This document shows, in pieces, positions 2,547-64,000 of a DNA stretch of 64,000 bases. Position 1 is the stretch's first letter. Each line of letters starts with the position of its first letter. Under the pieces are notes generated by a model. The model was given only the letters and a program-made list of their open reading frames with translations. It ran no database searches and was not told the DNA's origin. Source of the DNA: Octopus sinensis (Eukaryota); NCBI RefSeq assembly GCF_006345805.1, contig NC_043023.1, forward strand, positions 12,648,001 through 12,712,000, read 5' to 3'. The position numbers and the translations under genes were made by a program.

Positions 2547-2571
2547 TCGTATCAATATCAAAATTTGTTAC

Positions 2572-3133
2572 AACCCGGCAGGAAAGGTGAGTCTATAACC
2601 CATGGCCTCTACCTGGAATGTAGCCAGTCCACTTATGCATACCTTTCCTTCTTGGGACACAAAACTCTACTTGTGAAGACCTTGTTAAGGCAAGTGAGAA
2701 TCAGGATCAAAATCGAAATCTATCAACATCAATGGAAATTGTAGCTGTGATACCAGTGCTGGTGGCACGTAAGAAGCACCTACAGATTGTGGCCGCTGCC
2801 AGTCTCCCCTGGCACCTGTGCCAGTGGCATGTAAAAAGCACCATCCGAACGTGGCCGTTGCCAGCACCGCTTCAACTGGCTTCCATGCCGGTGGCTTGTA
2901 AAAAGCACCGACTGACCGTGGCCACTGCCAGACTGCGTAGGACCCTGTGCCGGTGGCACGTAAAAAGCATCCACTACATTCACAGAGTGGTTGGCGTTTA
3001 AAAAGGGCATCCAGCTGTAGAAACACTGCCAGATCAGACTGCAACCTGGTGCAGCCTCCTGGTATCCCAGACCCCAGTCAACCGTCCAATCCATGCTAGC
3101 AGGGAAAACAGATGTGATACAATGATGATGAGG
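2572..3133 (+). mobile_element. Sense RTE 3'-end fragment directly after the ZF1 stop (paralogs at about 10800-11465, 23668-24157, 30856-31348, 37475-37972, 46020-46520, 53382-53872, 62142-62497)
   Basis: ACCCGGCAGGA(C/A)A..TGAG.C.ATAACCCATGGCCTCTACCTGG matches the reverse complement of the RT stop region at 27570-27610. It is followed by the ~55-bp repeats and an ATGATG tail. Confidence 0.88.
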
Positions 3134-3202
3134 AGGATTCTCCATTGTTTCCTGTGACAGACAGCTGTTCTTTTGTGTACTGGACATTTTCAATGTTTTG
3201 TT

Positions 3203-3225
3203 ATTAAACATTTTGTAAAAATAAA
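3203..3225 (+). terminator. Candidate polyadenylation signals for the ZF transcript (ATTAAA, AATAAA); paralogs at about 11534, 38042, 46589
   Basis: First canonical hexamers downstream of the ZF stop and the RTE tail. Weak evidence given the AT-rich background. Confidence 0.4.
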
Positions 3226-4418: not shown

Positions 4419-5190
4419 GCAAGACCAGTGAGAACAGTCAAAATCAAAGCAAATCAATTCATATATCAGAAAGCAGAACCAAATTGAGGTCGATCAACAT
4501 CAGTGGGAATTGCAGCTGTGGTTAAGCGAACCATCCGATCGTGGTCGTTTCCCGCGCCGCACCGTCAAGCCTCCGTGTCGGTGGCACGTAAAAGCACCAC
4601 CCGTTCGGGTCCGTCGCCACCCTCGCCTGGCCCCCGTGCCGGTGACACATAAAAGCACCATCCGTTCGTGGCCGTGTGCCAGCTCTGCCTGGTCCCCGTG
4701 TCGGTGGGAGGTAAATGCACCACCCGTTCGCGTCCGTTACCAGCCTTGTCTGGCCCCGTGCCGGTGACACGTAAAAGCACCACCCGCTCGTGTCCGTTGC
4801 CAGCCTCACCTGGCCCTCGTGCCGGTGACACGTAAAAGCTCCATCTGTTCGTGGCCGTGTGCCAGCTCTGCCTGGTTCCCGTGTCGGTGGCACGTAAATG
4901 CACCACCCGTTCGTGGCCATTTGCCAGCTCTGTGTGGCCCCCGTGTCGGTGGCACGTAAAAGCACCACCCGTTCGTGACCGTTTGCCAGCAATGTCTGGC
5001 ACCTGTGCGGGTGGCGCGTAAAAAGCACCCACTACACTCACGGAGTGGTTGGCATTAGGAAGGGCATCCAGCCGTAGAACCACTGCCAGATCTGACTGGG
5101 CTTGATGAAGCCTTCTAGCTTCACAGACCCCAGTTGAACCGTCCAACCCATGCTAGCATGGAAAGCGGACGCTAAATGATGATGATGATG
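4419..5190 (+). mobile_element. Second RTE 3'-UTR fragment with a ~55-bp minisatellite (paralogs at about 13921-14520, 39290-39804, 47835-48371)
   Basis: About 8 repeats of GTG(C/T)CGGTG(G/A)CACGTAAAAGCACC, then the conserved CCCATGCTAGCATGGAAAGCGGACGCTAAATGATGATG tail. Confidence 0.85.
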
Positions 5191-5446
5191 AATCTTTCTA
5201 ATTTTTTGCAGATTGAAGAATTATCTTTTAAATCTGTAGGTCAAAAGGTAAAAATCCCAGCGCTTCTCTATTTCCTTTCGTAATTGTGCATTATGTTGGG
5301 AGCGGGGCCATCTTTTCCCTCCCCGTTGTCATTGGAAGAATTAATCAACCTTCGAATATTGAACACACGACACTACATTCCATCCACTGACGGTTCTCTC
5401 AAAGTAGCAACTTAATTATACATGAGAGAAAATAGATCACTGTGAT

Positions 5447-5651
5447 CATCATCATCATCATCGTTTAACGTCCGATTTCCGTTCTAGCATGGGTTGTACG
5501 ATTTGATTGAGGACTGGCGAACCAGGAGACAGCACCAGGCTCCAATCTGATCCGGCAGAGTTTCTACAGCTGGATGCCCTTCCTAACACCAACCAGCTGT
5601 AGAAACTCTACCAGATCAGATTGGAGCTTGGTGCAGCCATCTGGTTCGCCA
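5447..5651 (-). mobile_element. Short RTE-type 3' tail fragment with a fold-back (paralogs at 14777-14980, 40061-40265, 48628-48832, 63967-64000)
   Basis: (CAT)n CGTTTAACGTCCG...CTAGCATGGGTTG, followed by a 59-bp inverted repeat with a 19-nt loop. Confidence 0.8.
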
Positions 5652-5670
5652 ACTGTTCTCTGGGAATAAT

Positions 5671-8102: not shown

Positions 8103-9071
8103 ATACAAATATATTTGCAGTGAATCTTGCACGCATGATGTAGATTGGATCCACCATAGCCAAAATTTTAATTAACCCTTCACCAAACTTTTTCCCACGG
8201 CAGAACAATAGAGAAATCTCTATACAGAATGTTGTAAAAGTTTCAATGCCTCAATGGATTCTGACCCCTGCAAACATGGACATTAAATGGATGACAGTGT
8301 TGATGTTGTAAGATTTGCAATGTTGAATTACTATGTCGTTTAATGATTCTCTTTATCTCACTGCTTGTTTTTTTTTCTATTTCAGAATATAACATCCTGT
8401 TGATATGAAAGAAATTACTTCATTCAGATGTGCCTCTGATATTTTATCAGCTCCCATCAACCAAAGGAAGATGATATATTTATAAGGAGCATTCATCAAT
8501 ACATCAAACTCATCTTATAAAGGAAATCTGTGAAAAACAACAGCAAAATATTTCTTCTGGACGATGGAATTAACAGCAACAATTTGAAGTCTTTGCTGTC
8601 TGGAATATAGAGGAGATGATTGTTTTACAGGTTAATTAAGCTTGGATGACTTTACAAAGGGGTAGACAATTGTCACCTCTTGATTTAGATATTAAGCAAA
8701 ATCACAGATGAAAGAAGCATAGCATTAAATTATTCTCTGAAAATAGCAACACAAATATATTCATAGAATTGAATTTTTTTCCTATTTCATAATATCATAC
8801 CATGTTGATTTAAAAGAAATTTCTTCATTCAGATGTGTGTCTGATATTTTTATTGACTTTCATCAATTAAAGGAAGACCATATATTCATAAGGCACGTTC
8901 ATCAAAAGATCAACTTCTTTATATATAAAAAATCTTGGACAAACTATGGGGAAATATTTCTTCTGGATGATGGAATTAAGAGCAACATTTTTTTTGCCAT
9001 CTGGAATGTAGAGATGATGATGAACCTACAGGTTAAGTTTGAGTAACTTTACAAAAGAGTTAACCAATTTA

Positions 9072-9964
<893 letters not shown>

Positions 9965-10775: not shown

Positions 10776-12797
10776 TCGTATCAATATCCAAATTTATTAC
10801 AACCTGGCAGGACAAGTGAGACCATAACCCATGGCCTCTACCTGGGATGTAGCCAGTCCACTTTTGCATACCTTACTTTCTTGAGACACAAAACTCTACT
10901 TGTGAAGACCTGTTGAGTCAAGTGAGAATCAGAAATAGAATGAAAATCACTTAACATCAATGGAAATTGTAGCTGAGATACCAGTGCTGGTGGCACGTAA
11001 AAAGCACCATCCGATCGGTGCCGCTGGCAGCCTCCCCTGGCACCTGTGCCAGTGGCATGTAAAAAGCACCATCTGATCGTGGCCATTGCCAGCCTCGCCT
11101 GGCTCCCATGCTGGTGGCACATAAAAAGCAACGAGCGATCTTGGCCGATGCCAGCGCCCCTTGGCACGTAAAAAGCACCATCCGATCTTTGCCATTGCCA
11201 TCCTTGCCTGGCTTCCGTGCCAGTGGCACGTAAAAAGCATCGACCGATCGTGGCCGCTGCCTGCCACTCCTGGCCCCTGTGCCGGTGGCATGTAAAAAGC
11301 ATCCACTGCACTCACAGAGTGGTTGGCGTTTAAGAAGGGCATCCAGCTGCAGAAACACTGCCAGATCAGACTGCAACCTGGTTCAGCCTCCTGGCTTCCC
11401 AGACCCCAGTCAACCGTCCAACCCATGCTAGCAGGGAAAACAGATGTTATACAATGATGATGAGGAGGATTCTCTACAGTTTCCTGTGACAGACAGCTCT
11501 TCTTTTGTGTACTGGACATTTTCAATGTTTTGTTATTAAACATTTTGTAAAAATAAAATTTTTTGTGCATGCTTATTCTCTCTTTCTCTTTCTCTTTTAC
11601 TTGTTTCAGTCGTTTGACTGTGGCCATGCTGGAGCACCGCCTTTAATGCAGCATCTCGACCCCGGGACTTATTCTTTTGTAAGCCCAGTACTTATTCTAT
11701 CGGTCTCTTTTGCCGAACTGCTAACTGACGGGGACATAAACACACCAGCATCGATTGTCAAGCAATGCTAGGGGGACAAACACAATCACATTCATATATA
11801 TACATCTATACAACAGGCTTCTTTCAGTTTCCGTCTACCAAATCCACTCACAAGGCATTGGTCGGCCTGAGGCAATAGTAGATACTTACCCAAGGTGACA
11901 CGCAATGGGACTGAATCCAGAACCATGTGTTTGGTAAGCAAGCTACTTACCACACAGCCACTCCTGCGCCTATATGTATATTGTGATTACATTTTCTTTT
12001 GAGTTGTCATATTTTGTCCCATAGTTTCTGGGTAATCGGTAGCTATCTTATTTCTGGTGCCACTACAATCTTTCTATTTTCAAGCCCCGCACTCAAGGGG
12101 GAGCCGTGTAGTGACACCTGGTCCCTGACGCCATTTTAGGATTTTCATCCACGCATGCACAGGGGTAAGAGCCTGCTGGAAGCCCCTTATGCACATGTGC
12201 AGTCATCAGCATCAGCTAGGCTTGACCGCTGTCCTCTCTCTCTCTTCGCCCCTGCTTCCAACCAAGCCGGACGTCACTTGACCAGCTCCGTGTGGCTGGA
12301 ATTCTGAAGGCGATCCATGACTTCAGCGAATCTGTGAAGTATGCCTTCACAATCGTGATTAAACTGTCTCTGTTGCTTCTGCACCAAGGCGACCTAGCTA
12401 CTGATTGTCCAGAGATGTAACGCTTGTACAGACAGAAAAATAGATATTGTTATTTGTTCAGAGATCCTTGTTCTATTGATTTTTTAATGGCTTTGCAGGG
12501 TGACTGGGGAAATGTAAAGGTGTGCACGACCACCCTTGGACGGTTTTGAATGACCATAGAAAGTGCGAGACCTCTAACTGAAAAATTGTGGATTTGTATA
12601 AAAGACACACACACAGACATTTTGCCGTTTATATATATATTTAATGGCTTTGCGGGGTGACTGGGGAAATGTAAAGATGTGCACGACCACTCTTGGACGG
12701 TTTTGAATGACCATAGAAAGTGCGAGCCCTCTAACTGAAAAATTGTGGATTTGTTTAAAGGACAGGCACACACAGACAGACATTTGGCCATTTATAT

Positions 12798-13780: not shown

Positions 13781-15919
13781 ATATATATAGAGATGTTGAT
13801 GTAATTCAGCCTAAGGAGACATCTACAGCTGGCTACACGACATGATCTGTTTATATTCGCGAGTGCCCGTTCTCCATATTTTATTTGTTAGTATAAAATA
13901 CTTTTAAAAATGGAAGACTTAGCAACACCAGTGAGAACAGTCAAAATCAAAATCAAACCAAATCAATTCATATATCAGAAAGCAGAACCAAATTGAGGTC
14001 GATCAACATCAGTGGGAATTGCAGCTGTGGTTAAGCGAACCATCCGATCGTGGTCGTTTCCGGCGCCGCACCGTCTAGCCTCCGTATCGGTGACACGTAA
14101 AAGCACCACCCATTCGTGTCCGTTGCCAGCCTCACCTGGCCCCTGTGCCAGTGACACGTAGAAGCACCATCCGTTCTTGGCCGTGTGCCAGCTCTGCCTG
14201 GTCCCCGTGTCGGTGGGACGTAAAAGCACCACCCGTTCATGTCTGTTGCCAGCCTAGTCTGGCCCTGTGCCGGTGACACGTAAAAGCACCATCCGTTCGT
14301 GGCCGTTTGCCAGCTCTGTCTGGCCCTTGTGCGGGTGGCGCGTAAAAAGCACCCACTACACTCACGGAGTGAATGCTGTTAGGAAGGGCATCCAGCCATA
14401 GAAACACTGCCAGATCTAATTGGGCTTGATGAAGCCTTCTAGCTTCACAGACCCCAGTTGAACCGTCCAACCCATGCTAGCATGGAAAACGGACGCTAAA
14501 TGATGATGATGATGATGATGAATCTTCCTAATTTTCTGCAGATTTAAGAATTGTCTTTTAAATCTGTAGGTCAAAAGGTAAAAATCCCAGCGCTACTCTA
14601 TTTCCTTTCGTAATTGTGCATTATGTTGAGAGCGGCGCCATCTTTTCCCTCCCCGTTGTCATTGGAAGAATTAATCAACCTTCGAATATCGAACACAAGA
14701 CACTACATTCCATCCACTGACGGTTCTCTCAAAGTAGCAACTTAATTATACATGAGAGAAAATTGATCACTGTGATCATCATCATCATCATCGTTTAACG
14801 TCCAATTTCCATTCTAGCATGGGTTGTACGATTTGATTGAGGACTGGCGAACCAGGAAGCTGCACCAGGCTCCAATCTGATCTGGCAGAGTTTCTACAGC
14901 TGGATGCCCTCCTAACACCAACCAGCTGTAGAAACTCTACCAGATCAGAATGAAGCCTGGTGCTGCCATCTGGTTCGCCAACTATTCTCTGGGAATAATG
15001 GAGATCTTTTCGGTTTGAACGGCAGGTTTTTAAATTTCTAGGTAACTAAAAAAACTTTAAACTTCGTATACAGATAGAATGTATTTATAAAGCATCCTTT
15101 TCCTTGGCTTTATTGAGAAAATTCTGTAGTTTGTAACATATTTGTTGTTTTTTTTCTGCAATTTCAACCAATCAAGGACGTCTATTGAGGTAAAAAAAAA
15201 ACATTATGTGCCTTATGAATATGTCCTTCGTTTAAGAAACAGATTGGGATTATTTACATTTTTGAAGAAAAAAAGATGCCCTTTCCCCACCCCTAACCCT
15301 AACAAAGATTGAAATGCAATAGATCGATACTAGGGTCATAATTATGGGTGACAATTTCATATGACACCGCTACAAAAAACTGCCGGTCAAACCGAAAAGA
15401 TCCTTTTTTTTTACACAAAGTAAATAATAAGGCGATGCTTCGATATATAAGTACACACGTGACTTTGTTTACATTTGCGAAGATAACAGAAAGCCTTTTC
15501 TCCCCACTTCTAACCCTAACACGTGGAAATTATTAAAAAAAACTGCCGTTCAAACCGAAAAGATCCCAAATATCTTACAAACTATAGAATTTTCTCAATA
15601 AAGCCAAGAGAAAAAGATGTTTTATAAACACATTCTACCAGTATACGAAGTTTAAAAGTGTTTAGTTACGTGGACATTCTTTTAATAAACTGCCGTTCAA
15701 ACCGAAAAGATCCCAAATATCTTACAAACTATAGAATTTTCTCAATAAAGCCAAGAGAAAAAGATGTTTTATAAACACATTCTACCAGTATACGAAGTTT
15801 AAAAGTGTTTAGTTACGTGGAAATTATTTTCAAAAACTGCCGGTCAAACCGAAAAGATCCCCAAAAGGTATCCAAGCATTGTTCTTTAGATGAGAGAGAA
15901 GTGTGAAGGAAGGACAATG

Positions 15920-17231: not shown

Positions 17232-18273
17232 GGTTAATATCTAGATCCGCACCCGGTGGAAAAAATGGAAACGCAAATGTGTAACAGTTGTAAGGCATCG
17301 TATATTGACGTAATAAGACGGAAAAAAGGGGCGCTGACGAACGGGGGTGGGGGGGTGGTGGTGGAAATTCCCAGGATCAACCTGGAATCTAAAATGTGTA
17401 ACAGTTGTAAGGCATCGTATATTGACGGAATAAGACGTAAAAAAAGGGCGCTGACGAACGGGGGTGGGGGGGGGTCGGAAAATTCCCAGGATCAACCGTA
17501 GAGGATCCACGCCCAGGTGGCAAAAATGGAAAAAAATATGTGTAAGAGGTGTAAGGCATCGTATATTGAAGGAATATGACGAAAAAAAAGCGCGCTGACA
17601 AACGGGGGGGGGGGGGAGGGCGCTCGGAAAATTCCCAGGATCAACCGTAGAGGATCCACGCCCAGGTGGCAAAAATGGAAAAAAATATGTGTAAGAGGTG
17701 TAAGGCATCGTATATTGAAGGAATATGACGAAAAAAAAGCGCGCTGACAAACGGGGGGGGGAGGGCGCTCGGAAAATTGCCTACGATTTAAAGAAAAATT
17801 TACCATCAATTTTCACCATTTAAACGCATTGTTGGCATAAGGGAAGTAACTCTCTAAAAATCTCTATATATAAACGGCAGTTTTTCTGTGTGTCTGTCAG
17901 GTTGTACCCTCACCCTGACCACGGCTTTCAACCGATTCTGATGAAACTTGACACACACATAACCCAATGTCATAATTCAAAACTAACGCAGCGAAAATTT
18001 TGAAAAGTTCCCCCAGTTCTGAAAAATATCGATAAATTCGACATGGGGTCGAGAATTTCAATTTTTTTGCTATTTTCAATATTCTTCAATATTTTTGCTA
18101 AAAATGCTTTATAGTTATTTCCCTTACAAACCCGAGCAACGCCGGGCGATACTGCTAGTCTATATATATTTTTTTTTTATTTTACAAACAAAAAGTGAAA
18201 ACTGAAGTAATAGAATTTGAATTTTTGAAGTTGCGATTGATAATTATTCTGTGACAATCAATAATATTGGGAA
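17232..18273 (+). repeat. Left TIR of Merlin (~1040 bp; four ~110-150 bp G-run subrepeats plus an embedded Helitron-like element)
   Basis: Reverse complement of 19566-20463, except for one extra subrepeat and a few substitutions. Confidence 0.9.
17861..18158 (+). mobile_element. Non-autonomous Helitron-like element (298 bp) inside the left TIR
   Basis: 5' end TCTCTATATATAAA after an A. Subterminal hairpin CCCGAGCAACGCCGGG, then CTAG followed by T. No TSD. Confidence 0.75.
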
Positions 18274-18404
18274 AATATAATCTGTACTTACCACATGTGT
18301 GGTAGATTTGCTGATTATTTTCAACAAATCTACCACGCTTCTATTTCAAATTCTTTAACGTTGTCAGTTGTTACAGCAGCCACGTGGAAATTGGTCGAAC
18401 ATCT

Positions 18405-19358
18405 TTATTGCCCAGGATACAAATTCGCAGCTTGCAATAAAAATTCATGAATCCTTTTGGGAGCAGGGCGGAAAGCTTGCATGAATTGGTATGTAGCTAC
18501 ATATTGTTTTAAGTAACACGATTTAATTCCTGCTCTTATGACGTTTTTTTTTAAGCTCCCCCAAAATCTTTCTATTGTCTGTGTATGTATAGATGGGTTT
18601 GTTGGATCTACAAAATTCTGGCTGTGATTTATCTTAAAATGCGTGTAGCCTAATGTATCTAACCTATTATATACGGGCCAACAATCACTATATACAGTTG
18701 AACCAGGTTTAATGTGGCGTCTAATTAATGGAATTAGTGTGGAAGAATCTCGCCTTAGAATTTCACCACATTCTGATGTCAGGGGTATCAAAAAATTTTT
18801 CTTGGAATCTCTTTCGATTCCGCCAAATAGCCAAATAGTTTTCACAAGTCTCCCCCTGTTATATTTCCTCCTAACCAAGACTGTCTCATCTATTTCTACT
18901 TCTATTCCTGGCCCTCCAATTGGTGTTTGGGAATTTGTGGCCCAATGAAGACAGACTTCAGAGCAGAAGGACCTCCAATCAACCGACGTAGCAAGCGATA
19001 TATCTAAATTCTCAATAACTGCTTGGTGCGACCAATCTTCTGTTAAGAAATGGTTTACATACAAAAGAATTTTCCAGGGGGTTAATCTACTCCGATTCAA
19101 AAAGGTGTTCTTAAATATGGAAACAGAAAAACCACATTCTGTCGCCTTCTGTCTTCTTCTGCGAACCATTTTCCTGCAACGAAATATATGTGTTCCATTT
19201 CGTAGAATACACGGTGAATTGCACGTCGGGCAATTCACATTTCTTGGTATCACCCCATGTTCCCGAAAAAATTCTAATGCTGTTTCATCGTTAAGCCGAA
19301 ATCTCGAAACCCCGTCATACAGACTCAGCTCGCACGGAATAACACACGATGCCATCAT
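18405..19358 (-). CDS. Merlin/ISXO2-type DDE transposase, 317 aa
   Basis: N-terminal zinc ribbon (CPTC...CRK), then EVEIDET..RRKYNRGR...WLFGGIER, VYSDCW..Y and HTQTIERFW..LK, which match ISXO2/Merlin motifs. The frame is open. Confidence 0.92.
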   Translation of the reverse strand: MMASCVIPCELSLYDGVSRFRLNDETALEFFREHGVIPRNVNCPTCNSPCILRNGTHIFRCRKMVRRRRQKATECGFSVSIFKNTFLNRSRLTPWKILLYVNHFLTEDWSHQAVIENLDISLATSVDWRSFCSEVCLHWATNSQTPIGGPGIEVEIDETVLVRRKYNRGRLVKTIWLFGGIERDSKKNFLIPLTSECGEILRRDSSTLIPLIRRHIKPGSTVYSDCWPVYNRLDTLGYTHFKINHSQNFVDPTNPSIHTQTIERFWGSLKKNVIRAGIKSCYLKQYVATYQFMQAFRPAPKRIHEFLLQAANLYPGQ

Positions 19359-19565
19359 GCAAATTAAAATGACCAGATTAAAGATAAATTCAAATAATAT
19401 TTTCGTTAAAGGGAAGAGTACGTCTAGTCACTGCGAATACACAAATTTGAAAGGCTTTTCCACGCTGCCTGCGCACGCAATTAGGGCTGGCACTTCACGC
19501 AATTAGGGCTGGCACTTCCGGCAATGTGGTCACTCAATGTGGTCAACCGGAAGTTGGGCTGGCAC

Positions 19566-23643: not shown

Positions 23644-24295
23644 TCGTATCAATATCAAAATTTATTACAACCCGGCAGGACAAGTGAGACCATAACCCAT
23701 GGTCTCTACCTGGGATGTAGCCAGTCCACTTATGCATACCTTTCCTTCTTGGGACAGAAAACTCTACTACTGAAGACCTGTTGATGCAAGTGAGAATCAA
23801 AATCGAAATCAATCAACATCAATGGAAATTGTAGCTGTGATACCAGTACTGGTTGCACGTAAAAAGCACCATCCGATTGTGGCCATTGCCAGCCACGCCT
23901 GGCCTCTGTGCCGGTGGCACATAAAAAGCAACGGCCGATCTTGGCCGAAGCCAGCCTCACCTGGCCCCTGTGCCGGTGGCACATGAAAAGCATCCACTAC
24001 ACTGACAGAGTAGTTGGCGTTTAGGAAGGGCATCCAGCTGTAGAGACACTGCCAGATCAGACTGCAACCTGGTGCAGCCTCCTGGTTTCCCAGACCCAGT
24101 CAACTGTCCAACCCATGCTAGCAGGGAAAACAGATGTTAAACAATGATGATGATGAGGATTCTCTATTGTTTCCTGTGACAGACAGCTGTTCTTTTGTGT
24201 ACTGGACATTTTCAATGTGGGCGCACTCGCGCAAGCTAGTCGTAAGTAGTCGATCCTACAATTTTTTTTTATTAAACTAAGTAAATAAATTATTT

Positions 24296-26956: not shown

Positions 26957-29543
<2,587 letters not shown>

Positions 29544-30827: not shown

Positions 30828-31379
30828 TAATCGTATCAATATCAAAATTTGTTACAACCCGGCAGGACAAGTGAGACCACAACCCATGGCCTCTACCTGG
30901 GATGTAGCCAGTCCACTTATGCATACCTTTCCTTCTTGGGACACAAAACTCTACTTGTGAAGACTTGTTGAGGCAAGTGAGAATCAGAATCAAAATCGAA
31001 ATCAACCAACATCAATGGAAATTGCAGCTGTGATACCAATGCTGGTGGCATGTAAAAAGCACCATCCGATCGTGGCCATTGCCAGTCTCACCTGGCCCCC
31101 GTGCGGCTGGCACGTAAAAAGCACCATCCGACCGTAGCTGTTTGCCAGCCCCGTGTGGCACCTGTGTCCGGTGGCACGTACAAAGCACCCACTACACTCA
31201 CGGAGTGGTTGGCGTTAGGAAGGGCATCCAGCCGTAGAAACATTGCCAGATCAGACTGGGCCAGGTGCAGCCTTGTGGCTTCCCAGACCCCGGTCGAACC
31301 ATCCAACCCATGCTAGCATGGAAAGCGGACGCTAAATGATGATGATGACAAGAATTATGAATATTTTGTCTGCTAAAAG

Positions 31380-31589: not shown

Positions 31590-31950
31590 GTGACATTGAT
31601 TTTGTCTTTGTTGTGTTTTCATCATTATCATCCTCATCCTTCTTCTTCTTGTTCTCCGCCTCATCCTCCCTCTTTTTCTTTTTCTTCTTCTTCTCCTCCT
31701 CCTCCTTCTCCTCCTTCTCCGTCTTCTTCATCTTCTCCTCCTTTTTCTTCTTCTTCTTCTTCTTCTCCTTCTTCTTTTTCTTCTTCTTCATTGATTTTGT
31801 CTTTGTTGTGTTTTCTTCCTCATCATCATCCTCATCTTTCTTCTTCTTCTTCTCCTCCTCATCCTCCTTCTTTTTCTTTTTCATCTTCTTCTTCTTCTCC
31901 TTCTTCTCCTCCTCCATCTTCTCCTTCTTCTTCTTTTTCTTCTTCTTCAG
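31590..31950. repeat. (TTC/TCC)n polypyrimidine low-complexity tract with an internal duplication (shorter paralog at 54115-54300)
   Basis: Nearly pure C/T on the + strand. TTGATTTTGTCTTTGTTGTGTTTTC occurs twice here and once in the paralog. Confidence 0.9.
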
Positions 31951-37448: not shown

Positions 37449-40400
37449 TCGTATCAATATCAAAATTTATTACAACCCGGCAGGACAAGTGAGACCATAA
37501 CCCATGGCCTCTACATAGAATGTAGCCAGTCCACTTATGCATACCTTTCCTTCTTGGGACACAAAACTCTACTTGTGAATACCTGTTGAGGGAAGGGAGA
37601 ATCAGAATCAAAATCGAAATAAATCAACATTAATGGAAATTGTAGCTGTGATACCAGTGCTGGTGGCACGTAAAAAGCAACATTAGAACGTGGCCGTTGC
37701 CAGCACCGTCCCAACTGGCTTCCGGGCCGGTGGCACGTAAGAAGCACCAACCGATCGTGGCCGCTGCCAGCCTCTCCTGGCCCTTGTGCCCGTGGCACGT
37801 AAAAAGCATCCACTACATTCACAGAGTGGTTGGCGTTTAGGAAGGGCATCCAGCTGTAGAAACACTGCCAGATCAGACTGCAACCTGGTGCAGCCTCCTG
37901 GCTTCCCAGACCCCAGTCAACCGTCCAACCCATGCTAGCAGGGAAAACAGATGTTATACAATGATGATGAGGAGGATTCTCTATTGTTTCCTGTGACAGA
38001 CAGCTGTTCTTTTGTGTACTGGACATTTTCAATGTTTTGTTATTAAACATTTTGTAAAAATAAAATTCTTTGTGCATGCTTATTCTCTCTTTCTCTTTCT
38101 CTTTTACTTGTTTCAGTCGTTTGACTGTGGCCATGCTGGAGCGCCGCCTTTAATGCAGCATCTCGAACCCGGGACTTATTCTTTTGTAAGCCGAGTACTT
38201 ATTCTATCGGTCTCTTTTGCCGAACTGCTAAGTGACGGGGACATAGACAAACCAGCATCGATTGTCAAGCAATGCTAAGGGGACAAACACAAACACATGC
38301 ATATATATACATCTATACAACAGGCTTCTTTCAGTTTCCGTCTATCAAATCCACTCACAAGGCTTTGGTCGGCATGAGGCTATAGTAGATACTTACCCAA
38401 GGTGCCACGCAGTGGGACTGAACCTGGAACCATGTGGTTGGTAAGCAAGCTACTTAGCACACAGCCACTCCTGCGCCTATATCTATATTGTGATTACATT
38501 TTCTTTTGTGTTGACATATTTTCTGCCACATCTTCTGGGTAATCGGTAGCCATCTTATTTCTGGTGCCACTACAATCTTTCTATTTTCATGCTCCGCTCT
38601 CAAGGGGCAACCTTATAGTGACGTTTGGTCCCAGACACCATTTTAGGATTTTCATCCACGCATGCGCAGGGGTAAGAGCCTGCCGGAAGCCCCTTATGCA
38701 CATGTGCAGTCATCAGCATCAGCTAGGCTTCACCGCTGTCCTCTCTCTCTCCCTCTTCGCCCCTGCTTCCAACCAAGCCGGACGCAACTTGACCAGCTCC
38801 GTGTGGCTGGAATTCTGAAGGCGATCCATGACTTCGGCGAATCTGTGAAGTATGCCTTCACAATCGTGATTAAAGTGTCTCTGCTGCTTCCGCACGAAGG
38901 CGACCTAGCTACTGATTGTCCAGAGATGTAACGCTTGTACAGACAGAACAATAAATATTGTTTTTTGTTCAGAGATCCTTGTTCTATTGATTTTTTAATG
39001 GCTTTGCGGGGTGACTGGGGTAATGTAAAGATGTGCACGACCACCCTTGGACGGTTTTGAATGACCATAGAAAGTGCGAGCCCTCTAACTGAAAAATTGT
39101 GGATTTGTATAAAGGACAGGCACACACAGACAGACATTTGGCCATTTATATATAGAGAGATGTTGATGTAATTCAGCCTAAGGAGACATCTACAGCTGGC
39201 TTCACGACATGATCTGTTTATATTCGCGAGTGCCCGTTCTCCATATTTTATTTGTTAGTATAAAATACTTTTAAAAATGGAAGACTTAGCAAGACCAGTG
39301 AGAACAGTCAAAATCAAAATCAAAGCAAATCAATTCATATATCAGAAAGCAGAACCAAATTGAGGTCGATCAACATCAGTGGGAAGTGCAGCTGTGGTTA
39401 AGCGAACCATCCGATCGTGGTCGTTTCCGGCGCCGCCCCGTCTATCCTCCGTGTCGGTGACACGTAAAAGCACCATCCGTTCATGGCCGTTTGCCAGCTC
39501 TGTCTGGCCTCCGTGTCGGTAACACATAAAAGCACCATCCGTTTGTGGCCGTTTGCTAGCTCTGTCTGGCCACCGTGTCGGTGGCACGTAAAAGCACCAT
39601 CCGTTCATGACCGTCTGCCAGCTCTTTCTGGCACCTGTGCGGGTGGCACGTAAAAAGCACCCACTACAGTCACGGAGTGGTTGGCGTTAGGAAGGGCATC
39701 CAGATCTGAATGGGCTTGATGAAGCCAGCTAGATTCACAGACCCCAGTTGAACCGTCCAACACATGCTAGCATGGAAAGCGGACGCTAAATGATGATGAT
39801 GATGAATCTTCCTAATTTTCTGCAGATTTAAGAATTATCTTTTAAATCTGTAGGTCAAAAGGTAAAAATCCCAGCGCTTCTCTATTTCCTTTCGTAATTG
39901 TGCATTATGTTGGGAGCGGGGCCATCTTTTCCTTCCCCATTGTCATTGGAAGAATTAATCAACCTTCGAATATCGAACACACGACACTACATTCCATCCA
40001 CTGACGGTTCTCTCAAAGTAGCAACTTAATTATACATGAGAGAAAATAGATCACTGTGATCATCATCATCATCATCGTTTAACGTCCGATTTCCATTGTA
40101 GCATGGGTTGCACGATTTGATTGAGGACTGGCGAACCAAGTGGCAACACCAGGCTCCAATCTGATCTGGCAGAGTTACTACAGCTGGATGCCCTTCCTAA
40201 CACCAACCAGCTGTAGAAACTCTACCAGATCAGATTGGAGCCTGGTGCAGCCATCTGGTTCGACAACTGTTCTCTGGGAATAATGGGGATCATTTCGGTT
40301 TGAACAGCAGGTTTTAAAATTTCTAGGTAACTAAAAAAATTTTTAACTTCGTATACAGATAGAATGTATTTATAAAGCATCTTTTTCGTTGGCTCTATTG

Positions 40401-45995: not shown

Positions 45996-48900
45996 TCGTA
46001 TCAATATCAAAATTTATTACAACCCGGCAGGACAAGTGAGACCATAACCCATGGCCTCTACCTAGAATGTAGCCAGTCCACTTATGCATACCTTTCCTTC
46101 TTGGGACACAAAACTCTACTTGTGAATTCCTGTTGAGGGAAGGGAGAATCAGAATCAAAATCGAAATAAATCAACATTAATGGAAATTGTAGCTGTGATA
46201 CCAGTGCTGGTGGCACGTAAAAAGCAACATTCGAACGTGGCCGTTGCCAGCACCGTCCCAACTGGCTTCCGGGCCGGTGGCACGTAAGAAGCACCGACCG
46301 ATCGTGGCCGCTGCGAGCCTCTCCTGGCCCTTGTGCCTGTGGCACGTAAAAAGCATCCACTACATTCACAGAGTGGTTGGCGTTTAGGAAGGGCATCCAG
46401 CTGTAGAAACACTGCCAGATCAGACTGCAACCTGGTGCAGCCTCCTGGCTTCCCAGACCCCAGTCAACCGTCCAACCCATGCTAGCAGGGAAAACAGATG
46501 TTATACAATGATGATGAGGAGGATTCTCTATTGTTTCCTGTGACAGACAGCTGTTCTTTTGTGTACTGGACATTTTCAATGTTTTGTTATTAAACATTTT
46601 GTAAAAATAAAATTCTTTGTGCATGCTTATTCTCTCTTTCTCTTTCTCTTTTACTTGTTTCAGTCGTTTGACTGTGGCCATGCTGGAGCGCCGCCTTTAA
46701 TGCAGCATCTCGAACCCGGGACTTATTCTTTTGTAAGGCGAGTACTTATTCTATCGGTCTCTTTTGCCGAACTGCTAAGTGACGGGGACATAGACACACC
46801 AGCATCGATTGTCAAGCAATGCTAGGGGGACAAACACAGACACATGCATATATATACATCTATACGACAGGCTTCTTTCAGTTTCCGTCCATCAAATCCA
46901 CTCACAAGGCTTTTGTCGGCCTGAGGCTATAGTAGAAGATAGTTACCCAATGTGACACGCAGTGGGACTGAACCTGAAAACATGTGTTTGGTAAGCAAGC
47001 TACTTACCACACAGCCACTCCTGCGCCTATATCTATATTGTGATTACATTTTCTTTTGAATTGTCATATTTTGTGCCACAGTTTCTGGATAATCGGTAGC
47101 CATCTTACTTCTGGTGTCACTACAATCATTCTATTTTCATGCTCCACACTCAAGGGAGAGCCTTGTAGTGACGCCTGGTCCCAGACGCCATTTTAGGATT
47201 TTCATCCACGCATGCCCATGGGTAAGAGCCTGCCGGAAGCCCCTTATGCACATGTGCAGTCATCAGCATCCGCTAGGCTTGACCGCTGTCCTCTCTCTCT
47301 CTTCGCCCCTGCTTCCAACCAAGCCGGACGCAACTTGACCAGCTCAGTGTGGCTGGAGTTCTGAAGGCTATCCATGACTTCCGCGAATCTGTGAAGTATG
47401 CCTTCACAATCGTGATTAAACTGTCTCTGCTGTTTCCGCACCAAGGCGACCTAGCTACTGATTGTCCAGAGATGTAACGCTTGTACAGACAGAAAAATAA
47501 ATATTGTTATTTGTTCAGAGATCCTTGTTCTATTGATTTTTTAATGGCTTTGCGGGGTGACTGGGGAAATGTAAAGATGTGCACGACCACCCTTGGACGG
47601 TTTTGAATGACCATAGAAAGTGCAAGACCTCTAACTGAAAAATTGTGGATTTGTATAAAGGAGAGGCACACACAGACAGACATTTGGCCATTTATATATA
47701 GAGAGATGTTGATGTAATTCAGCCTAAGGAGACATCTACAGCTGGCTACACGACATGATCTGTTTATATTCGCGAGTGCCCATTCTCCATATTTTATTTG
47801 TTAGTATACAATACTTTTAAAAATGGAAGACTTAGCAAGACCAGTGAGAACAGTCAAAATCAAAATCAAAGCAAATCAATTCATATATCAGAAAGCAGAA
47901 CCAAATTGAGGTCGATCAACATCAGTGGGAATTGCAGCTGTGGTTAAGCGAACCATCTGATCGTGGTCGTTTCCGGCCCCGCCACGTCTAGCCTCCGTGT
48001 CGGTGACACGTAAAAGCACCATCCGTTCGTGGCCGTTTGCCAGCTCTGTCTGGCCCCCGTGTCGTTAACACATAAAAGCACCATCCGTTTGTGGCTGTTT
48101 GCCAGCTCTGTCTGGCCACCGTGTTGGTGGCACGTAAAAGCACCATCCGTTCATGACCGTCTGCCAGCTCTTTCTGGCACCTGTGCGGGTGGCACGTAAA
48201 AAGCACCCACTACACTCATGGAGTGGTTGGCGTTAGGAAGGGCATCCAGCCATAGAAACACTGCCAGATCTGAATGGGCTTGATGAAGCCTTCTAGCTTC
48301 ACAGACCCCAGTTGAACCGTCCAACACATGCTAGCATGGAAAGCGGACGCTAAATGATGATGATGATGATGAATCTTGCTAATTTTCTGCAGATTTAAGA
48401 ATTATCTTTTAAATCTGTAGGTGAAAAGGTAAAAATCCCAGCGTTTCTCTATTTCCTTTCGTAATTGTGCATTATGTTGGGAGCGGGGCCATCTTTTCCC
48501 TCCCCGTTGTCATTGGAAGAATTAATCAACCTTCGAATATCGAACACACGACACTACATTCCATCCACTGACGGTTCTCTCAAAGTAGCAACTTAATTAT
48601 ACCTGAGAGAAAATAGATCACTGTGATCATCATCATCATCATCGTTTAGCGTCCGATTTCCATTCTAGCATGGGTTGCACGATCTGATTGAGGACTGGCG
48701 AACCAGGAGGCAGCACCAGGCTCTAATCTGATGTGGCAGAGTTTCTACAGCTGGATGCTCTTCCTAACACCAACCAGCTGTAGAAACTCTACCAGATCAG
48801 ATTGGAGCTTGGTGCAGCCATCTGGTTCGCCAACTGTTCTCTGGAAATAATGGGGATCTTTTCGGGTTGAACGGCAGGTTTTTAAATTTCTAGGTAACTA

Positions 48901-52135: not shown

Positions 52136-53276
<1,141 letters not shown>

Positions 53277-55299
53277 TAATGTTGTGATATTTGTGGTGAG
53301 TCATTCTCTCAAAAACGCCAATTAAGTACACATCTGAGTATTCATACACAGGTGTAATCGTATCAATATCAAAATTTATTACAACCCGGCAGGACAAGTG
53401 AGACCACAACCCATGGCCTCTACCTGGGATGTAGCCAGTCCACTTATGCATACCTTATCTTCTTGTGACACAAAACTCTACTTGTGAAGACCTTTTGAGG
53501 CAAGTGAGAATCAGAATCAAAATCAAAATCAACCAACATCAATGGAAATTGCAGCTGTGATACCAATGCTGGTGGCATGTAAAAAGCACCATCCGATCGT
53601 GGTCGTTGCCAGACTCGCCTGGCCCCCGTGCGGCTGGCACGTAAAACGCACCATCCGATTGTGGCCGTTGCCAGCCCCGTCTGGCACCTGTAATGGTGGC
53701 ATGTAAAAAGCACTCACTACACTCACGGAGTGGTTGGCGTTAGGAAGGGCATCCAGCCGTAGAAACATTGCCAGATCAGACTGGGCCAGGTGCAGCCTTG
53801 TGGCTTCCCAGACCCCGGTCGAACCATCCAACCCATGCTAGCATGGAAAGCGGACGCTAAATGATGATGATGACAAGAATTATGAATATTTTGTCTGCTA
53901 AAAGACAGGGTTTATTCCTCTTCAAGCTTGACATTATCAACTTCAGGTTCTTGGATGTCAACATGAAATTCATGAATCACAACTTCAATATCATTTATAT
54001 ATCTAAATATATCAACACAGAGATGACTTTGGTTTCTGGAGAGGATTGTGCTGGATTTTTGAGGAATTTGTTATGAGAGAATAAAGGAATGGGAATAAGG
54101 AATAAAAGTTTTAAGTGACATTGATTTTGTCTTTGTTGTGTTTTCATCATCATCATCCTCATCCTTCTTCTTCTTGTTCTCCGCCTCATCCTCCTTCTTT
54201 TTCTTTTTCTTCTCCCCCTCTTTCTTCTCCTCCTTCTCCGTCTTCTTCATCTTCTCCTTTTTCTTCTTCTTCTTCTCCTTCTTCTTTTTCTTCTTCTTCA
54301 GTGTTCATTTCCTTTGCATGCCTGGGTGTGAAATTGTGACCTGAGCTGGCAAGCCAGAGTGCTGCTCCAAGTTCCACTCAGATTTTGCTTGCTTTCTTAG
54401 GCTGTATCCCCTTAAGACGTCCATTGAGGTGAAAAACATTCTGTGCATAATGAATATGTCCCTCGTTTAAGAAACAGATTGGGTTTATTTACATTTGTGG
54501 AGAAAAAAAGATAGCCTTCCCTCCACCCCTAAACCTAAAACAGATTTAGATGCAATAGATCGATACTAGGGTCATAATTATGGGTGACAATTTCATATGA
54601 CACTGCAAGAAAAAACTGCCGTTCAAACCGAAAAGATCCGAATGTGTGAGTACACTTTATTGAAAGAATCTTGTAAAAGTTTGAAAACCCTTGAAAGTGA
54701 AGTTCTTGACAGAAAGGGACAAAGAGGAAACTGCAACGAATCCCACCAGTCAGTAGAGCCACCTATTGGAGAACTGAAGGAAGACAATCATATAAAGGGA
54801 AATAACTTCTACTACACTTCAACCACGGTCCAAGTAGATTCTTAATTAAGGAGCTTAATTACTGATTCACTGACTCGTTGCTTATTTGTGAATACGGTAA
54901 GTTGATAAAGATTTACTTTAAGGCTGTAAAGGTGATAATACTACTACTAATAATAATAATGTAAATAATAGAATTCTGTGAACCTCTCGATGTTACAGTA
55001 ATTATTTTTCGAGGCGGGAACCTGACAACAATTAAGAAAATATATTTGCTCGTCTTAATTAATAACTTCCAAACTGGAATGTTGATCCGTTGTTTATGAA
55101 AACCTATGATTGACTGTTCCATGTGATATAAGGTAAATTGACATCTAAAGTGAGTGTAATGTAGCATAATTAATTAGTAAAATGAGGGGAAACCGATTGA
55201 AGAATACCACATTAATTAAAGTTGCCCTGTTGCTTAAGAGGCACTAATTAATTGGTGAGTTGATAATGACTTACTTTAAGGTTATATTAAGAATAGTAA

Positions 55300-62116: not shown

Positions 62117-64000
62117 TCGTATCAATATCAAAATTTATTACAACCCGGCAGGACAAGTGAGACCATAACCCATGGCCTCTACCTGGGATGTAGCCAGTCC
62201 ACTTATGCATAGCTTTCCTTCTAGGGACACAAAACTCTACTTGTGAAGACCTGTTGCGGCAAGTGAGAATCAGATTCCAAATCGAAATCAATCAACATCA
62301 ATAGAAATTGTAGCTGTGATACCAGTGCTGGTGGCACATAAAAAGCACCAACCGATCGTGGCCGCTGCCAGCTTCCTCTGGCACCTGTGCCAGTGGCATG
62401 TAATAAGCACCATCCGAACGTGGCCGTTGCCAGCACCGCTTGAACTGGCTTCCATGCCGGTGGCTTGTAAAAAGCACCGACTGACCGTGGCCACTGCTAA
62501 GTGACGGGGACATAGACACACCAGCATCGATTGTCAAGCAATGCTAAGGGGACAAACACAAACACATGCATATATATACATCTATACAACAGGCTTCTTT
62601 CAGTTTCTGTCTACAAAATCCACTCACAAGGCTTTGGTCGGCATGAGGCTATAGTAGATACTTACCCAAGGTGCCACGCAGTGGGACTGAACCTGGAACC
62701 ATGTGGTTGGTAAGCAAGCTACTTACCACACAGCCACTCCTGCGCCTATATGTATATTGTGATTACATTTTCTTTTGAATTGTCATATTTTCTGCCACAT
62801 CTTCTGGGTAATCGGTAGCCATCTTATTTCTGGTGCCACTCCAATCTTTCTATTTCCATGCTCCGCTCTCAAGGGGCAACCTTATAGTGACGCCTGGTCC
62901 CAGACGCCATTTTAGGATTTTCATCCACGCATGCGCAGGGGTAAGAGCCTGCCGGAAGCCCCTTATGCACATGTGCAGTCATCAGCATCAGCTAAGCTTG
63001 ACCGCTGTCCTCTCTCTCTCTCTTCGCCCCTGCTTCCAACCAAGCCAGACGCAACTTGACCACCTCCGTGTGGCTGGAATTCTGAAGGCGATCCATGACT
63101 TCAGCGAATCTGAGAAGTATGCCTTCACAATCGTGATTAAAGTGTCTCTGCTGCTTCCGCACGAAGGCGACCTAGCTACTGATTGTCCAGAGATGTAACG
63201 CTTGTACAGACAGAAGAATAAATATTGTTATTTGTTCAGAGATCCTTGTTCTATTGATTTTGTTATGGCTTGGTGGGGTGACTGGGGAAATGTAAAGATG
63301 TGCACGACCTCCCTTTGACGGTTTGGAATGACCATAGAAAGTGCGAGCCCACGAACTGAAAAATTGTCGATTTGTATAAAGGACACACGCACAGACAGAT
63401 ATTTTTCCGTTTATATATATATTTAATGGCTTTGCGGTGTAACTGGGGAAATGTAAAGATGTGCACGACCACCCTTGGACGGTTTTGAATGACCATAGAA
63501 AATGCGAGCCCTCTAACTGAGAAACTGTGGATTTGTATAAAGGACACGCACACACAGACAGACATTTGGCCATTTATATATAGAGAGATGTTGATGTAAT
63601 TCAGCCTAAGGAGACATCTACAGCTGGCTACACGACATGATCTGTTTATATTCGCGAGTGCCCGTTCTTCATATTTTATTTGTTAGTATAAAATACTTTT
63701 AAAAAATGGATGAATCTTCCTAATTTTCAGCAGATTTAAGAATTATCTTTTAAATCTGTAGGTCAAAAGGTAAAAATCCCAGCGTTTCTCTATTTCCATT
63801 CGTAATTGTGCATTATGTTGGGAGCGGCGACATCTTTTCCCTCCCCGTTGTCATTGGAAGAATTAATCAACCTTCGAATATCGAACACGCAACACTACAT
63901 TCCATCCACTGACGGTTCTCTCAAAGTAGCAACTTAATTATACATGAGAGAAAATAGATCACTGTGATCATCATCATCATCATCGTTTAACGTCCGATTT

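What the first reader, a model, noticed from the sequence alone, without database searches (positions are those of the whole stretch)
2547..3225. Every sense ZF gene has a LINE-derived 3' UTR that starts at the RT stop codon region
Seen: about 25 nt after each of the 8 ZF stop codons, the sequence becomes a sense RTE fragment that begins at the last RT codons (ACCCGGCA.GAC, T-R-Q-D*). It runs through the stem-loop repeats to the (ATG)n tail (ZF8's copy is truncated by a deletion), and candidate polyA signals come only afterwards. The in-window LINE (26957-29354) provides the reference. Established: RTE/BovB-type LINEs and their partner SINEs share 3' ends that RT recognises. Inference: ZF mRNAs carry the cis signal for RTE RT, so they could be retro-mobilised or co-regulated with the LINE (piRNA, editing, localisation). 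The 5' junction is shared by all copies, but ZF4 and ZF7 have a different tail variant and a different flank right after the tail (ACAAGAATTATG versus GAGGAGGATTCTC). That fits ectopic recombination with another RTE copy, or re-priming at the tail.
Basis: partly seen in the sequence, partly recalled or inferred. Interest (0 to 1): 0.72.

Follow-up and report, generated by a model that had tools for sequence, protein, structure and literature searches.

The report
Old LINE tail inside zinc-finger 3' ends
One old, 5'-truncated LINE fragment landed just behind the stop codon of a zinc-finger gene and was then copied eight times along with the whole gene by ordinary tandem DNA duplication, so the pattern is real but ordinary and does not show that these genes are moved by the LINE.

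Summary
All 8 sense zinc-finger (ZF) reading frames end at the same TAA. Each is followed by the same 26-nt spacer and a sense LINE fragment that begins 12 nt before the LINE's own stop codon (T-R-Q-D*). In 7 of 8 it runs through ~62-nt hairpin repeats to an (ATG)n tail.

The shared junction, shared private changes, and 88-96% collinear homology of whole 7-9 kb units (intergenic DNA, a SINE, other LINE relics, leader) point to one ancestral insertion into a short 3' UTR. It then spread by tandem DNA duplication, not retrocopying.

- The terminal double stem-loop conserved across this LINE family is damaged by shared substitutions in ZF1, 2, 3, 5 and 6. It is intact only in ZF4/ZF7.
- The ZF4/ZF7 fragment is a recombinant with a different flank.
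- No transcript or genome-wide data could be reached.

Verdict: a TE-derived 3' region inherited passively. The retro-mobilisation or co-regulation reading is unsupported but not excluded. Low interest.

The parts
2547..2572 (+). 26-nt spacer between the ZF1 stop codon (2544-2546) and the LINE fragment. The same spacer follows all 8 stops (10776, 23644, 30831, 37449, 45996, 53358, 62117). Probably the start of the original short 3' UTR.
2573..3136 (+). ZF1 copy of the LINE fragment (UTR lineage, one extra 62-nt repeat). The tail is ATGATGATG followed by decayed AGGAGG. The ZF1 ORF is broken by several frameshifts.
3137..3225 (+). Post-tail flank with ATTAAA (3203) and AATAAA (3220), probably the end of the original 3' UTR. 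The same flank occurs in ZF2 (hexamers 11535, 11552), ZF5 (38042, 38059) and ZF6 (46589, 46606). A SINE follows immediately.
10802..11468 (+). ZF2 copy of the LINE fragment (UTR lineage, about 2.7 extra 62-nt repeats). The ZF2 ORF is broken.
23670..24158 (+). ZF3 copy of the LINE fragment (UTR lineage). It keeps TTAAAC and (ATG)4. The flank is interrupted at 24218 by other sequence. The ZF3 ORF is broken.
30857..31347 (+). ZF4 copy, a chimeric LINE fragment. The 5' part belongs to the UTR lineage and the last ~250 nt to a canonical subfamily with an almost intact terminal module (one mismatch in the outer stem) and (ATG)4. The breakpoint is at about 31070-31130. A new flank (ACAAGAATTATG...) follows, with AATAAA at 31555. 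The ZF4 gene is split by the 2.4-kb LINE and also frameshifted.
37475..37975 (+). ZF5 copy of the LINE fragment (UTR lineage), with an internal AATAAA at 37618 (+170). ZF5 (36564-37448, 294 aa) is intact.
46022..46522 (+). ZF6 copy of the LINE fragment (UTR lineage), with an internal AATAAA at 46165 (+170). ZF6 (44187-45995, 602 aa, 20 fingers) is intact.
53384..53872 (+). ZF7 copy, the same chimeric LINE fragment and flank as ZF4 (94.6% identical over 963 nt), with AATAAA at 54080. The ZF7 ORF (52136-53203, 355 aa) ends 152 nt before the shared stop because of a frameshift.
62143..62497 (+). ZF8 copy, LINE fragment cut after about 355 nt. A deletion with ACTGC microhomology joins it to the SINE and removes the last repeats, the terminal module, the tail and the poly(A) hexamers. 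ZF8 has a frameshift near its 5' end.
26957..29354 (-). Reference LINE copy, 5'-truncated at 2.4 kb. It has an RT ORF (27591-29318, RVT_1), a ~640-nt 3' UTR with a microsatellite and 62-nt hairpin repeats, the terminal module and (ATG)7. It is inserted antisense in the first finger of ZF4, between CACTGTGAT and ATCTGTGG.
4523..5191 (+). Second, independent sense LINE relic in the standard repeat unit, with a canonical tail. Copies lie at about 14032-14521, 39399-39805 and 47945-48372. Its presence in several units shows that the units are DNA duplicates.

Best explanation
A single 5'-truncated copy of a stringent-type LINE inserted in sense orientation into the short 3' UTR of a founder C2H2 zinc-finger gene. 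The copy comprised the last 12 coding nt, the whole ~0.5-0.6 kb 3' UTR and the (ATG)n tail. It landed 26 nt after the stop codon and about 65-90 nt upstream of the gene's ATTAAA/AATAAA. This lengthened the presumed 3' UTR from roughly 120 nt to 600-780 nt.

The relic then decayed, mostly by CpG transitions. Afterwards the whole 7-9 kb unit (leader, single coding exon, LINE relic, poly(A) region, SINE, further LINE relics) was multiplied head-to-tail by unequal crossing-over.

Later events within the array:
- The number of 62-nt repeats changed.
- One unit recombined inside the repeats with another copy of the LINE family. That gave the ZF4/ZF7 type, which has a canonical tail and a new flank and was itself duplicated.
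- ZF8 lost the distal half by a microhomology deletion.
- Most reading frames broke.

Shown: the junction identity, the collinearity of the units, the chimerism, the decay of the terminal module, and the ORF states. Inferred: that the fragment is transcribed as a UTR, the order of events, and that the relic is carried passively rather than selected.
For: - The spacer and start point are identical in 8 of 8 copies. Private differences from the LINE are shared by all copies, for example a 10-nt ACAAAACTCT insertion.
- Whole units are collinear at 88-96% identity across intergenic DNA. Examples: 45996-50395 matches 37449-41866 at 94.5%, and 57188-62068 matches 40808-45695 at 90.3%.
- The post-tail flank and SINE are 93-100% identical among ZF1, 2, 5 and 6.
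- Acceptor-like leader motifs occur twice upstream of each ATG, 15 hits against 0.37 expected.
- Terminal-module substitutions are shared by ZF1, 2, 3, 5 and 6, so they predate those duplications. Predicted stability is -4.5 kcal/mol (z +1.3) against -8.8 to -14.9 for canonical family members.
- The 5' part of the fragment and its repeats are less conserved between units (84-93%) than the neighbouring intergenic DNA (93-94%). Repeat number also varies.
- The whole presumed UTR folds no better than shuffles (z -0.25).
- ZF4/ZF7 chimerism: the 5' part is 86.7% identical to ZF1, whereas ZF5's 5' part is 83.9% identical to ZF1. The 3' part is 79% identical to ZF1, against 91.5% for ZF5. Diagnostic sites switch at about 31070-31130.
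Against: - No transcript data could be reached, so inclusion in the mRNA is unproven.
- No empty site or target-site duplication was found to prove the insertion directly.
- The last ~236 nt (terminal box, tail and post-tail flank) are somewhat better conserved (95-100%) than flanking intergenic DNA (93-94%). This could mean selection on the 3' end, or on the poly(A) region alone.
- For ZF4/ZF7 homology with the other units ends within the LINE fragment, and the flank beyond its tail is unrelated. Taken alone, that is also what a retro-mobilised 3' end would look like.
- Only one 64-kb window was examined. Dispersed copies elsewhere cannot be excluded.
Confidence: 0.8

Rival explanations
1. 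Because ZF mRNAs end in the LINE's own 3' region, the LINE reverse transcriptase recognises them in trans, as it does partner SINEs. It has copied, or can copy, ZF genes to new sites, contributing to the family's expansion.
For: - The fragment is in sense orientation and complete from the RT stop region to the tail.
- The family has a conserved terminal double stem-loop, kept with different stem letters in a 55%-identical relative. That suits stringent 3'-end recognition, described for RTE, CR1 and L2-type LINEs (PMC3747384, PMC4176376).
- ZF4 and ZF7 carry this module almost intact (one outer-stem mismatch), and unrelated flank begins right after their tail.
Against: - All 8 copies are DNA tandem duplicates. 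Homology extends upstream through the leader and intergenic DNA in all units, ZF7 included, and past the tail in ZF1, 2, 5 and 6.
- The module has one broken pair in each stem, an altered linker and a decayed tail in ZF1, 2, 3, 5 and 6. Mutated stem-loops strongly reduce retrotransposition in tested stringent LINEs (PMC4176376).
- The tail is internal, 68-213 nt before the first post-tail hexamer. ZF5 and ZF6 have an AATAAA before the repeats.
- ZF4 is a broken gene.
Confidence: 0.05
2. The LINE-derived segment has been co-opted as a regulatory 3' UTR. It might be a target for LINE-directed small RNAs, or for RNA-binding, localisation or editing factors, tying expression of this ZF subfamily to the LINE.
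For: - The fragment is retained in sense orientation in every unit.
- The last ~236 nt are 95-100% identical between units, against 93-94% for downstream intergenic DNA.
- TE fragments are common in octopus transcripts, with 26% carrying a retroelement piece (PMC9115989).
Against: - The 5' part and the repeats evolve faster than neutral-looking flanks, and repeat number varies.
- ZF8 lost half of the fragment.
- Six of the eight genes have disrupted frames.
- There is no excess folding stability and no Rfam match.
- The better-conserved stretch includes the poly(A) signals, which would explain its conservation without any LINE-related function.
Confidence: 0.1
3. Independent LINE insertions occurred at a hot spot behind each ZF stop codon.
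For: This LINE family does show repeated use of one site elsewhere in the window. Two antisense insertions both abut CACTGTGAT in a finger.
Against: The 5' truncation point is identical to the nucleotide in all 8 copies. They share indels and substitutions relative to the LINE, and they share flanks on both sides.
Confidence: 0.01

Closest known systems
Transposon-derived 3' UTR segments (a LINE or SINE fragment embedded between stop codon and poly(A) signal of a host gene)
   Same: A sense LINE fragment lies between the stop codon and the canonical hexamers and makes up most of the presumed UTR. Such embedding is frequent in octopus transcripts (PMC9115989).
   Different: Here the same fragment is seen eight times because the host gene was tandemly duplicated. 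Transcription was not verified.
Tandem segmental duplication of C2H2 zinc-finger gene clusters (cephalopod C2H2 expansions, mammalian KRAB-ZNF clusters)
   Same: Head-to-tail units of 7-9 kb, variable finger number, many decayed members, and many TE insertions between and within units. Lineage-specific clustered expansions are described for cephalopods (PMC12513265, PMC9068888).
   Different: Nothing essential. The cited papers do not mention the LINE-derived 3' region.
SINE/LINE pairs with a common 3' tail (stringent recognition, e.g. Bov-tA/BovB, UnaSINE1/UnaL2)
   Same: A non-LINE RNA carrying the LINE's 3' region and tail repeats. The LINE family has a conserved terminal stem-loop (PMC3747384, PMC1636434, PMC4176376).
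   Different: A Pol II gene rather than a small Pol III element. The tail is internal to the presumed transcript. The module is decayed in most copies. No dispersed copies, target-site duplications or tail-bounded homology were seen in the window.
RTE-class LINEs of octopus (RTE-2_OV and the O. bimaculoides element)
   Same: A LINE with a repeat-rich 3' UTR that starts right after the ORF and a non-poly(A) tail. Relatives encode endonuclease plus RT in about 960-1000 aa (PMC9115989).
   Different: Identity with those elements was not tested, because no sequence match was found in the held supplements. Relatives also show a PHD-like motif after the RT. Clade placement was not done.
LINE-LINE recombination and LINE insertion-mediated deletions that leave chimeric elements (known for human L1; from my own knowledge)
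   Same: The ZF4/ZF7 fragment is a chimera of two copies of one family joined in a homologous repeat region, with replacement of about 3 kb of downstream DNA.
   Different: The donor copy and its original flank were not found in the window. The second relic of the standard unit is not the donor.

Membership tests
5'-truncated LINE (non-LTR retrotransposon) insertion | Collinear homology to the 3' end of an RT-coding element, ending in that element's tail repeat | tested here: met
   All copies align from LINE position 1796 to the (ATG)n tail. The reference copy encodes RVT_1 (1.8e-31). Its closest solved relatives are L1 ORF2p and R2.
5'-truncated LINE (non-LTR retrotransposon) insertion | Target-site duplication or an empty site | tested here: inconclusive
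   No duplication is visible between the 5' flank (...ATTTATTACA) and the 3' flank (ATTCTCTATTG). No paralogue lacking the insert was available.
RTE clade of LINEs | Single ORF with an N-terminal AP-endonuclease and an RT | tested here: inconclusive
   The window copy is 5'-truncated and has only the RT. Relatives of 920-1000 aa carry Exo_endo_phos plus RVT_1, and also a PHD-like motif.
RTE clade of LINEs | RT phylogeny places it with RTE/BovB | not tested
   No named clade reference sequences were available. The best database relatives are unnamed.
RTE clade of LINEs | Short simple-repeat tail instead of poly(A), with a repeat-rich or short 3' UTR | tested here: met
   (ATG)7 in the LINE and (ATG)n in relatives L001 and L002. 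In L002 the ORF runs into the terminal module. RTE tails of this type are described in PMC3747384, PMC2887409 and PMC9115989.
RNA mobilised in trans through a shared LINE tail (SINE-like behaviour) | Intact copy of the LINE's terminal recognition structure | tested here: not met
   In ZF1, 2, 3, 5 and 6 one pair is broken in each of the two conserved stems, giving -4.5 kcal/mol (z +1.3). Canonical members give -8.8 to -14.9. ZF4 and ZF7 keep the module almost intact (one outer-stem mismatch, -8.8 kcal/mol). ZF8 lacks it.
RNA mobilised in trans through a shared LINE tail (SINE-like behaviour) | Copies end at the tail in unrelated flanks and start at the transcript's 5' end, without introns or promoter DNA | tested here: not met
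   In the window, homology continues past the tail in ZF1, 2, 5 and 6 (also in ZF3 for about 60 nt), and upstream through the leader and intergenic DNA in all units. The genome-wide situation could not be tested with these tools.
Tandem segmental gene duplication | Head-to-tail units with collinear homology that includes non-genic DNA | tested here: met
   Eight units show 88-96% identity across intergenic DNA, the SINE and secondary LINE relics.
TE-derived 3' UTR | The fragment lies between the stop codon and the poly(A) site that is actually used | not testable with these tools
   Only hexamers could be scanned. In ZF1, 2, 3, 4 and 7 the first hexamer comes after the tail. In ZF5 and ZF6 it comes at +170, inside the fragment. 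No transcripts could be retrieved.

The most novel reading that the evidence does not exclude
The stop-spacer-LINE junction marks a much larger zinc-finger subfamily across the genome. Transcripts that keep an intact terminal module (the ZF4/ZF7 type) are then either reverse-transcribed in trans by the LINE protein or targeted by LINE-directed small RNAs. That would couple a family of putative transposon-binding repressors to the activity of the transposon whose tail they carry.
Probability: 0.05. Interest if true: 0.65.

Novelty: new member of a known kind. Interest (0 to 1): 0.2.

Why it matters
As it stands, it matters little. It is a clean, datable marker: one LINE insertion shared by all members shows that this local zinc-finger array grew by tandem DNA duplication after the insertion. 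It also illustrates how LINE relics lengthen 3' UTRs and seed recombination inside such arrays.

It would matter if the junction proved to be genome-wide, transcribed, and bound by the LINE protein or matched by small RNAs. That would link the expansion or regulation of cephalopod-type C2H2 genes to a specific LINE family. The mechanisms of that expansion are still described as open (PMC12513265).

Tried and rejected
- A protein search with ZF6 was swamped by generic C2H2 proteins of vertebrates and returned no close relative.
- Exact look-ups found nothing on record for ZF6, ZF5, the antisense ORF over the UTR, or the transposase ORF. Neither the source genome nor transcripts could be reached.
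- A search with the 199-aa antisense ORF that spans the UTR, meant as a specific handle for the junction, gave no hit.
- Two metagenome scans gave 0 matches, one for the junction and one for the conserved 31-nt LINE box.
- The supplementary transcript files of the octopus LINE paper hold none of six diagnostic k-mers.
- Rfam gave no match in the window.
- I tested whether ZF4/ZF7 arose by recombination between the UTR relic and the second LINE relic of the same unit. Rejected: the flanks after the two tails show no homology above shuffled controls, and several diagnostic sites differ.
- I tested whether the second relic also begins at the RT stop codon, which would suggest a 3'-UTR-only element or a truncation hot spot. 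Dropped: the alignment is ambiguous and a collinear placement about 100 nt further 3' fits as well.
- A full-text search for the SINE sequence, meant to name the organism, gave 0 papers. 'Octopus-like' remains my inference from the SINE and the CDICGKSFS-type fingers.

Full report
**What the window is.** The 64-kb window is a head-to-tail array of C2H2 zinc-finger (ZF) genes in a TE-rich eukaryotic genome. From the SINE and the CDICGKSFS-type fingers I infer a cephalopod, probably an octopus. No tool could confirm this. The ZF6 product has 20 fingers (zf-C2H2 7.5e-121).

**Check of the observation.** A BLAST of 2547-3225 against the window finds eight sense copies that all start at query position 1. 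They lie at 2547, 10776, 23644, 30831, 37449, 45996, 53358 and 62117. Each follows a TAA that closes the last finger.
- After the stop comes an identical 26-nt spacer and then ACCCGGCAGGAC....
- The in-window LINE has an RT ORF at 27591-29318 on the minus strand (RVT_1 1.8e-31) ending ...REKTRQD*. Its closest solved relatives are L1 ORF2p and R2.
- All eight ZF copies align to this LINE from position 1796, the T-R-Q-D codons, with E-values of 1e-35 to 1e-95.
- The alignment continues through a microsatellite-like stretch, ~62-nt repeats with the hairpin GTGCCGGTGGCAC, a conserved box and the (ATG)n tail.
- ZF8 is cut at 62497 by a deletion with 5-nt microhomology that joins it to the downstream SINE.
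- ZF4 and ZF7 share another tail variant and another flank.

So the description is accurate and far beyond chance.

**Corrections to the observation.**
- The scan for AATAAA/ATTAAA shows the first hexamers after the tail in ZF1, 2, 3, 4 and 7. ZF5 and ZF6 have AATAAA at +170, inside the fragment and before the repeats, created by a C-to-A change.
- Only ZF5 (294 aa) and ZF6 (602 aa) are open from the shared ATG (MNNSTKAK...) to the shared stop.
- ZF1-4 carry frameshifts or stops. ZF4 is also split by the 2.4-kb LINE. ZF7 shifts frame 152 nt before the shared stop. ZF8 shifts frame near its 5' end.
- The two genes most likely to be functional are therefore the two with a possible early poly(A) signal.

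**One insertion, then DNA duplication.**
- The eight copies share the truncation point to the nucleotide. They also share private differences from the LINE, such as a 10-nt insertion.
- A reference unit (37449-45995) aligns collinearly with the other units at 88-96% identity over kilobases of non-coding DNA. This includes the post-tail flank with the hexamers, a SINE, a second sense LINE relic, an inverted LINE relic and the leader region.
- Among ZF1, 2, 5 and 6, the 94 nt after the tail are 96-100% identical and the next 1 kb is 93-96% identical.
- A splice-acceptor-like motif (TTTYCTATTTCAG|AATAT) occurs twice upstream of each ATG, 15 matches against 0.37 expected.
- These are DNA-level tandem duplicates of a unit that already carried the LINE fragment.
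- The post-tail flank with ATTAAA and AATAAA followed by a T-rich stretch looks like the end of the original short 3' UTR, into which the LINE inserted (inference).
- No target-site duplication is visible.

**The LINE's 3' end and its state in the ZF copies.** Three relatives of the RT were fetched from environmental assemblies: L001 (74% aa identity), L002 (58%) and L003 (55%).
- L001 has the same architecture as the window LINE: hairpin repeats, conserved box, terminal module and (ATG)7.
- In L002 the ORF runs directly into the terminal module.
- The module is an outer stem (CGUCC/GGACG) around a hairpin (CCAUG-CUAG-CAUGG), followed by YUAAAY and the tail.
- L003 keeps both stems with entirely different letters (AAGUC/GACUU and CCCCU/AGGGG) and a (GUA)n tail.
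- This is the best candidate for the element the RT recognises. Stringent LINEs behave this way, and mutating the stem-loop strongly lowers their retrotransposition (PMC3747384, PMC1636434, PMC4176376).
- In ZF1, 2, 3, 5 and 6 the module carries five or six substitutions, mostly CpG-type transitions. One pair is broken in each stem, the linker is altered in ZF1, 2, 5 and 6, and the tail has decayed to (ATG)3-4 plus AGG.
- Predicted stability is -4.5 kcal/mol (z +1.3). The ZF4/ZF7 type gives -8.8, and L001-L003 give -10.1 to -14.9.
- Because these changes are shared, the decay predates the duplications that made those five units.
- The whole presumed UTR folds no better than shuffled sequence (z -0.25).
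- Between units, the 5' part and the repeats of the fragment are less conserved (84-93%) than the intergenic flank, and repeat number varies. Only the last ~236 nt, which include the poly(A) hexamers, are slightly better conserved (95-100%).

**ZF4 and ZF7.**
- Their fragment is as close to ZF1 in the first ~360 nt as ZF5's is (86.7% against 83.9%). In the last ~300 nt it is much more distant (79% against 91.5%). There it resembles canonical copies of the family at 85-86%.
- Diagnostic sites switch from the 'UTR lineage' to 'canonical' states at about 31070-31130, inside the second-last 62-nt repeat.
- About 3 kb of the standard unit downstream is replaced by other sequence, which ZF4 and ZF7 share at 94.6% identity.
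- This fits homologous recombination with another copy of the family, or a new insertion whose 5' end was resolved by homology, followed by duplication of the recombinant unit. It does not fit re-priming at the tail.
- The second relic of the standard unit is not the donor.
- The upstream side of ZF7 is collinear with the other units over more than 7 kb, so ZF7 is not a retrocopy either.

**Comparison with what is known.**
- TE fragments inside 3' UTRs are common. In octopus transcriptomes 26% of transcripts carry a retroelement piece (PMC9115989).
- Clustered lineage-specific C2H2 expansions are well described in cephalopods (PMC12513265, PMC9068888).
- RTE-class LINEs with repeat-rich 3' UTRs are described in two octopus species (PMC9115989).
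- I found no paper noting a LINE-derived 3' region in an octopus ZF subfamily. This is still an instance of a known kind.
- The label 'RTE' is plausible from the tail type, from relatives with endonuclease plus RT, and from the published octopus elements. It was not tested by phylogeny.

**Verdict.** The functional inference, a working cis signal with retro-mobilisation or co-regulation, is not supported by anything in the window and is weakened by four findings:
- the DNA-level duplication of whole units;
- the decayed terminal module in five of the seven tail-bearing copies;
- the internal position of the tail;
- the early AATAAA in the two intact genes.

The inference cannot be excluded genome-wide, because neither the genome nor transcripts could be searched.

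Noticed in passing
window 26950-26965 and 29350-29360; 5395-5460 (copies near 14775, 40059, 48626): Two independent antisense insertions of this LINE family abut the same finger motif, CACTGTGAT|. The 2.4-kb LINE splits ZF4's first finger between GAT and ATC with no gain or loss of target bases. The inverted relic abuts a relic finger at the same motif. Counting the reconstructed ATTCTC flank of the UTR copy, 6 of 7 independent tail flanks begin with AT. This suggests priming by microhomology with the (ATG)n tail. C2H2 arrays offer GATATC every 84 nt.
   Followed up: partly
window 37618-37623 and 46165-46170: AATAAA created by a single C-to-A change inside the LINE fragment, found only in the two intact genes ZF5 and ZF6. 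A GU-rich TGTAGCTGTG lies about 25 nt downstream. It may be a short-UTR poly(A) site.
   Followed up: partly
window 17232-20463: A 3.2-kb DNA transposon present in one unit only. It has terminal inverted repeats of about 1 kb (96-99% complementary), an apparent 8-bp target-site duplication, and an intact 317-aa ORF (18405-19358, minus strand) with a DDE_Tnp_IS1595 (ISXO2/Merlin-like) domain. It looks young and possibly active.
   Followed up: partly
window 9070-9960 (minus strand): An inverted internal fragment of a ZF finger array (7 recognisable fingers) sits between the leader and the ATG of ZF2. It is bounded on both sides by the same ~68-nt sequence (cagaagatataaattggttaactc...). It has no 3' end of its own, so it says nothing about the junction.
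   Followed up: partly
L001 1955-2036; L002 3315-3380; L003 3278-3340; window 26965-27020 (minus strand): Terminal module of the LINE family: two nested stems followed by YUAAAY and a trinucleotide-repeat tail. Both stems are fully compensated in the most distant relative, L003. In L002 the ORF ends inside the module. This is a candidate RT recognition element.
   Followed up: partly
window 5445-5655 (copies at 14775-14980, 40059-40259, 48626-48832): A short LINE relic with a head-to-head inverted duplication of its conserved box. This is the kind of structure twin priming produces in L1.
   Followed up: no
window 31590-31960 and 54100-54400: A long purine/pyrimidine-biased low-complexity tract of (CTT)n/(CCT)n type, found only in the ZF4/ZF7-type units. 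It gives long spurious ORFs on both strands.
   Followed up: no
window 37149-37448 compared with 45696-45995: The last 300 coding nt of ZF5 and ZF6 are only 82.7% identical, while their adjacent 3' regions are 98-100% identical. This points to finger shuffling, gene conversion or diversifying change within the arrays.
   Followed up: no
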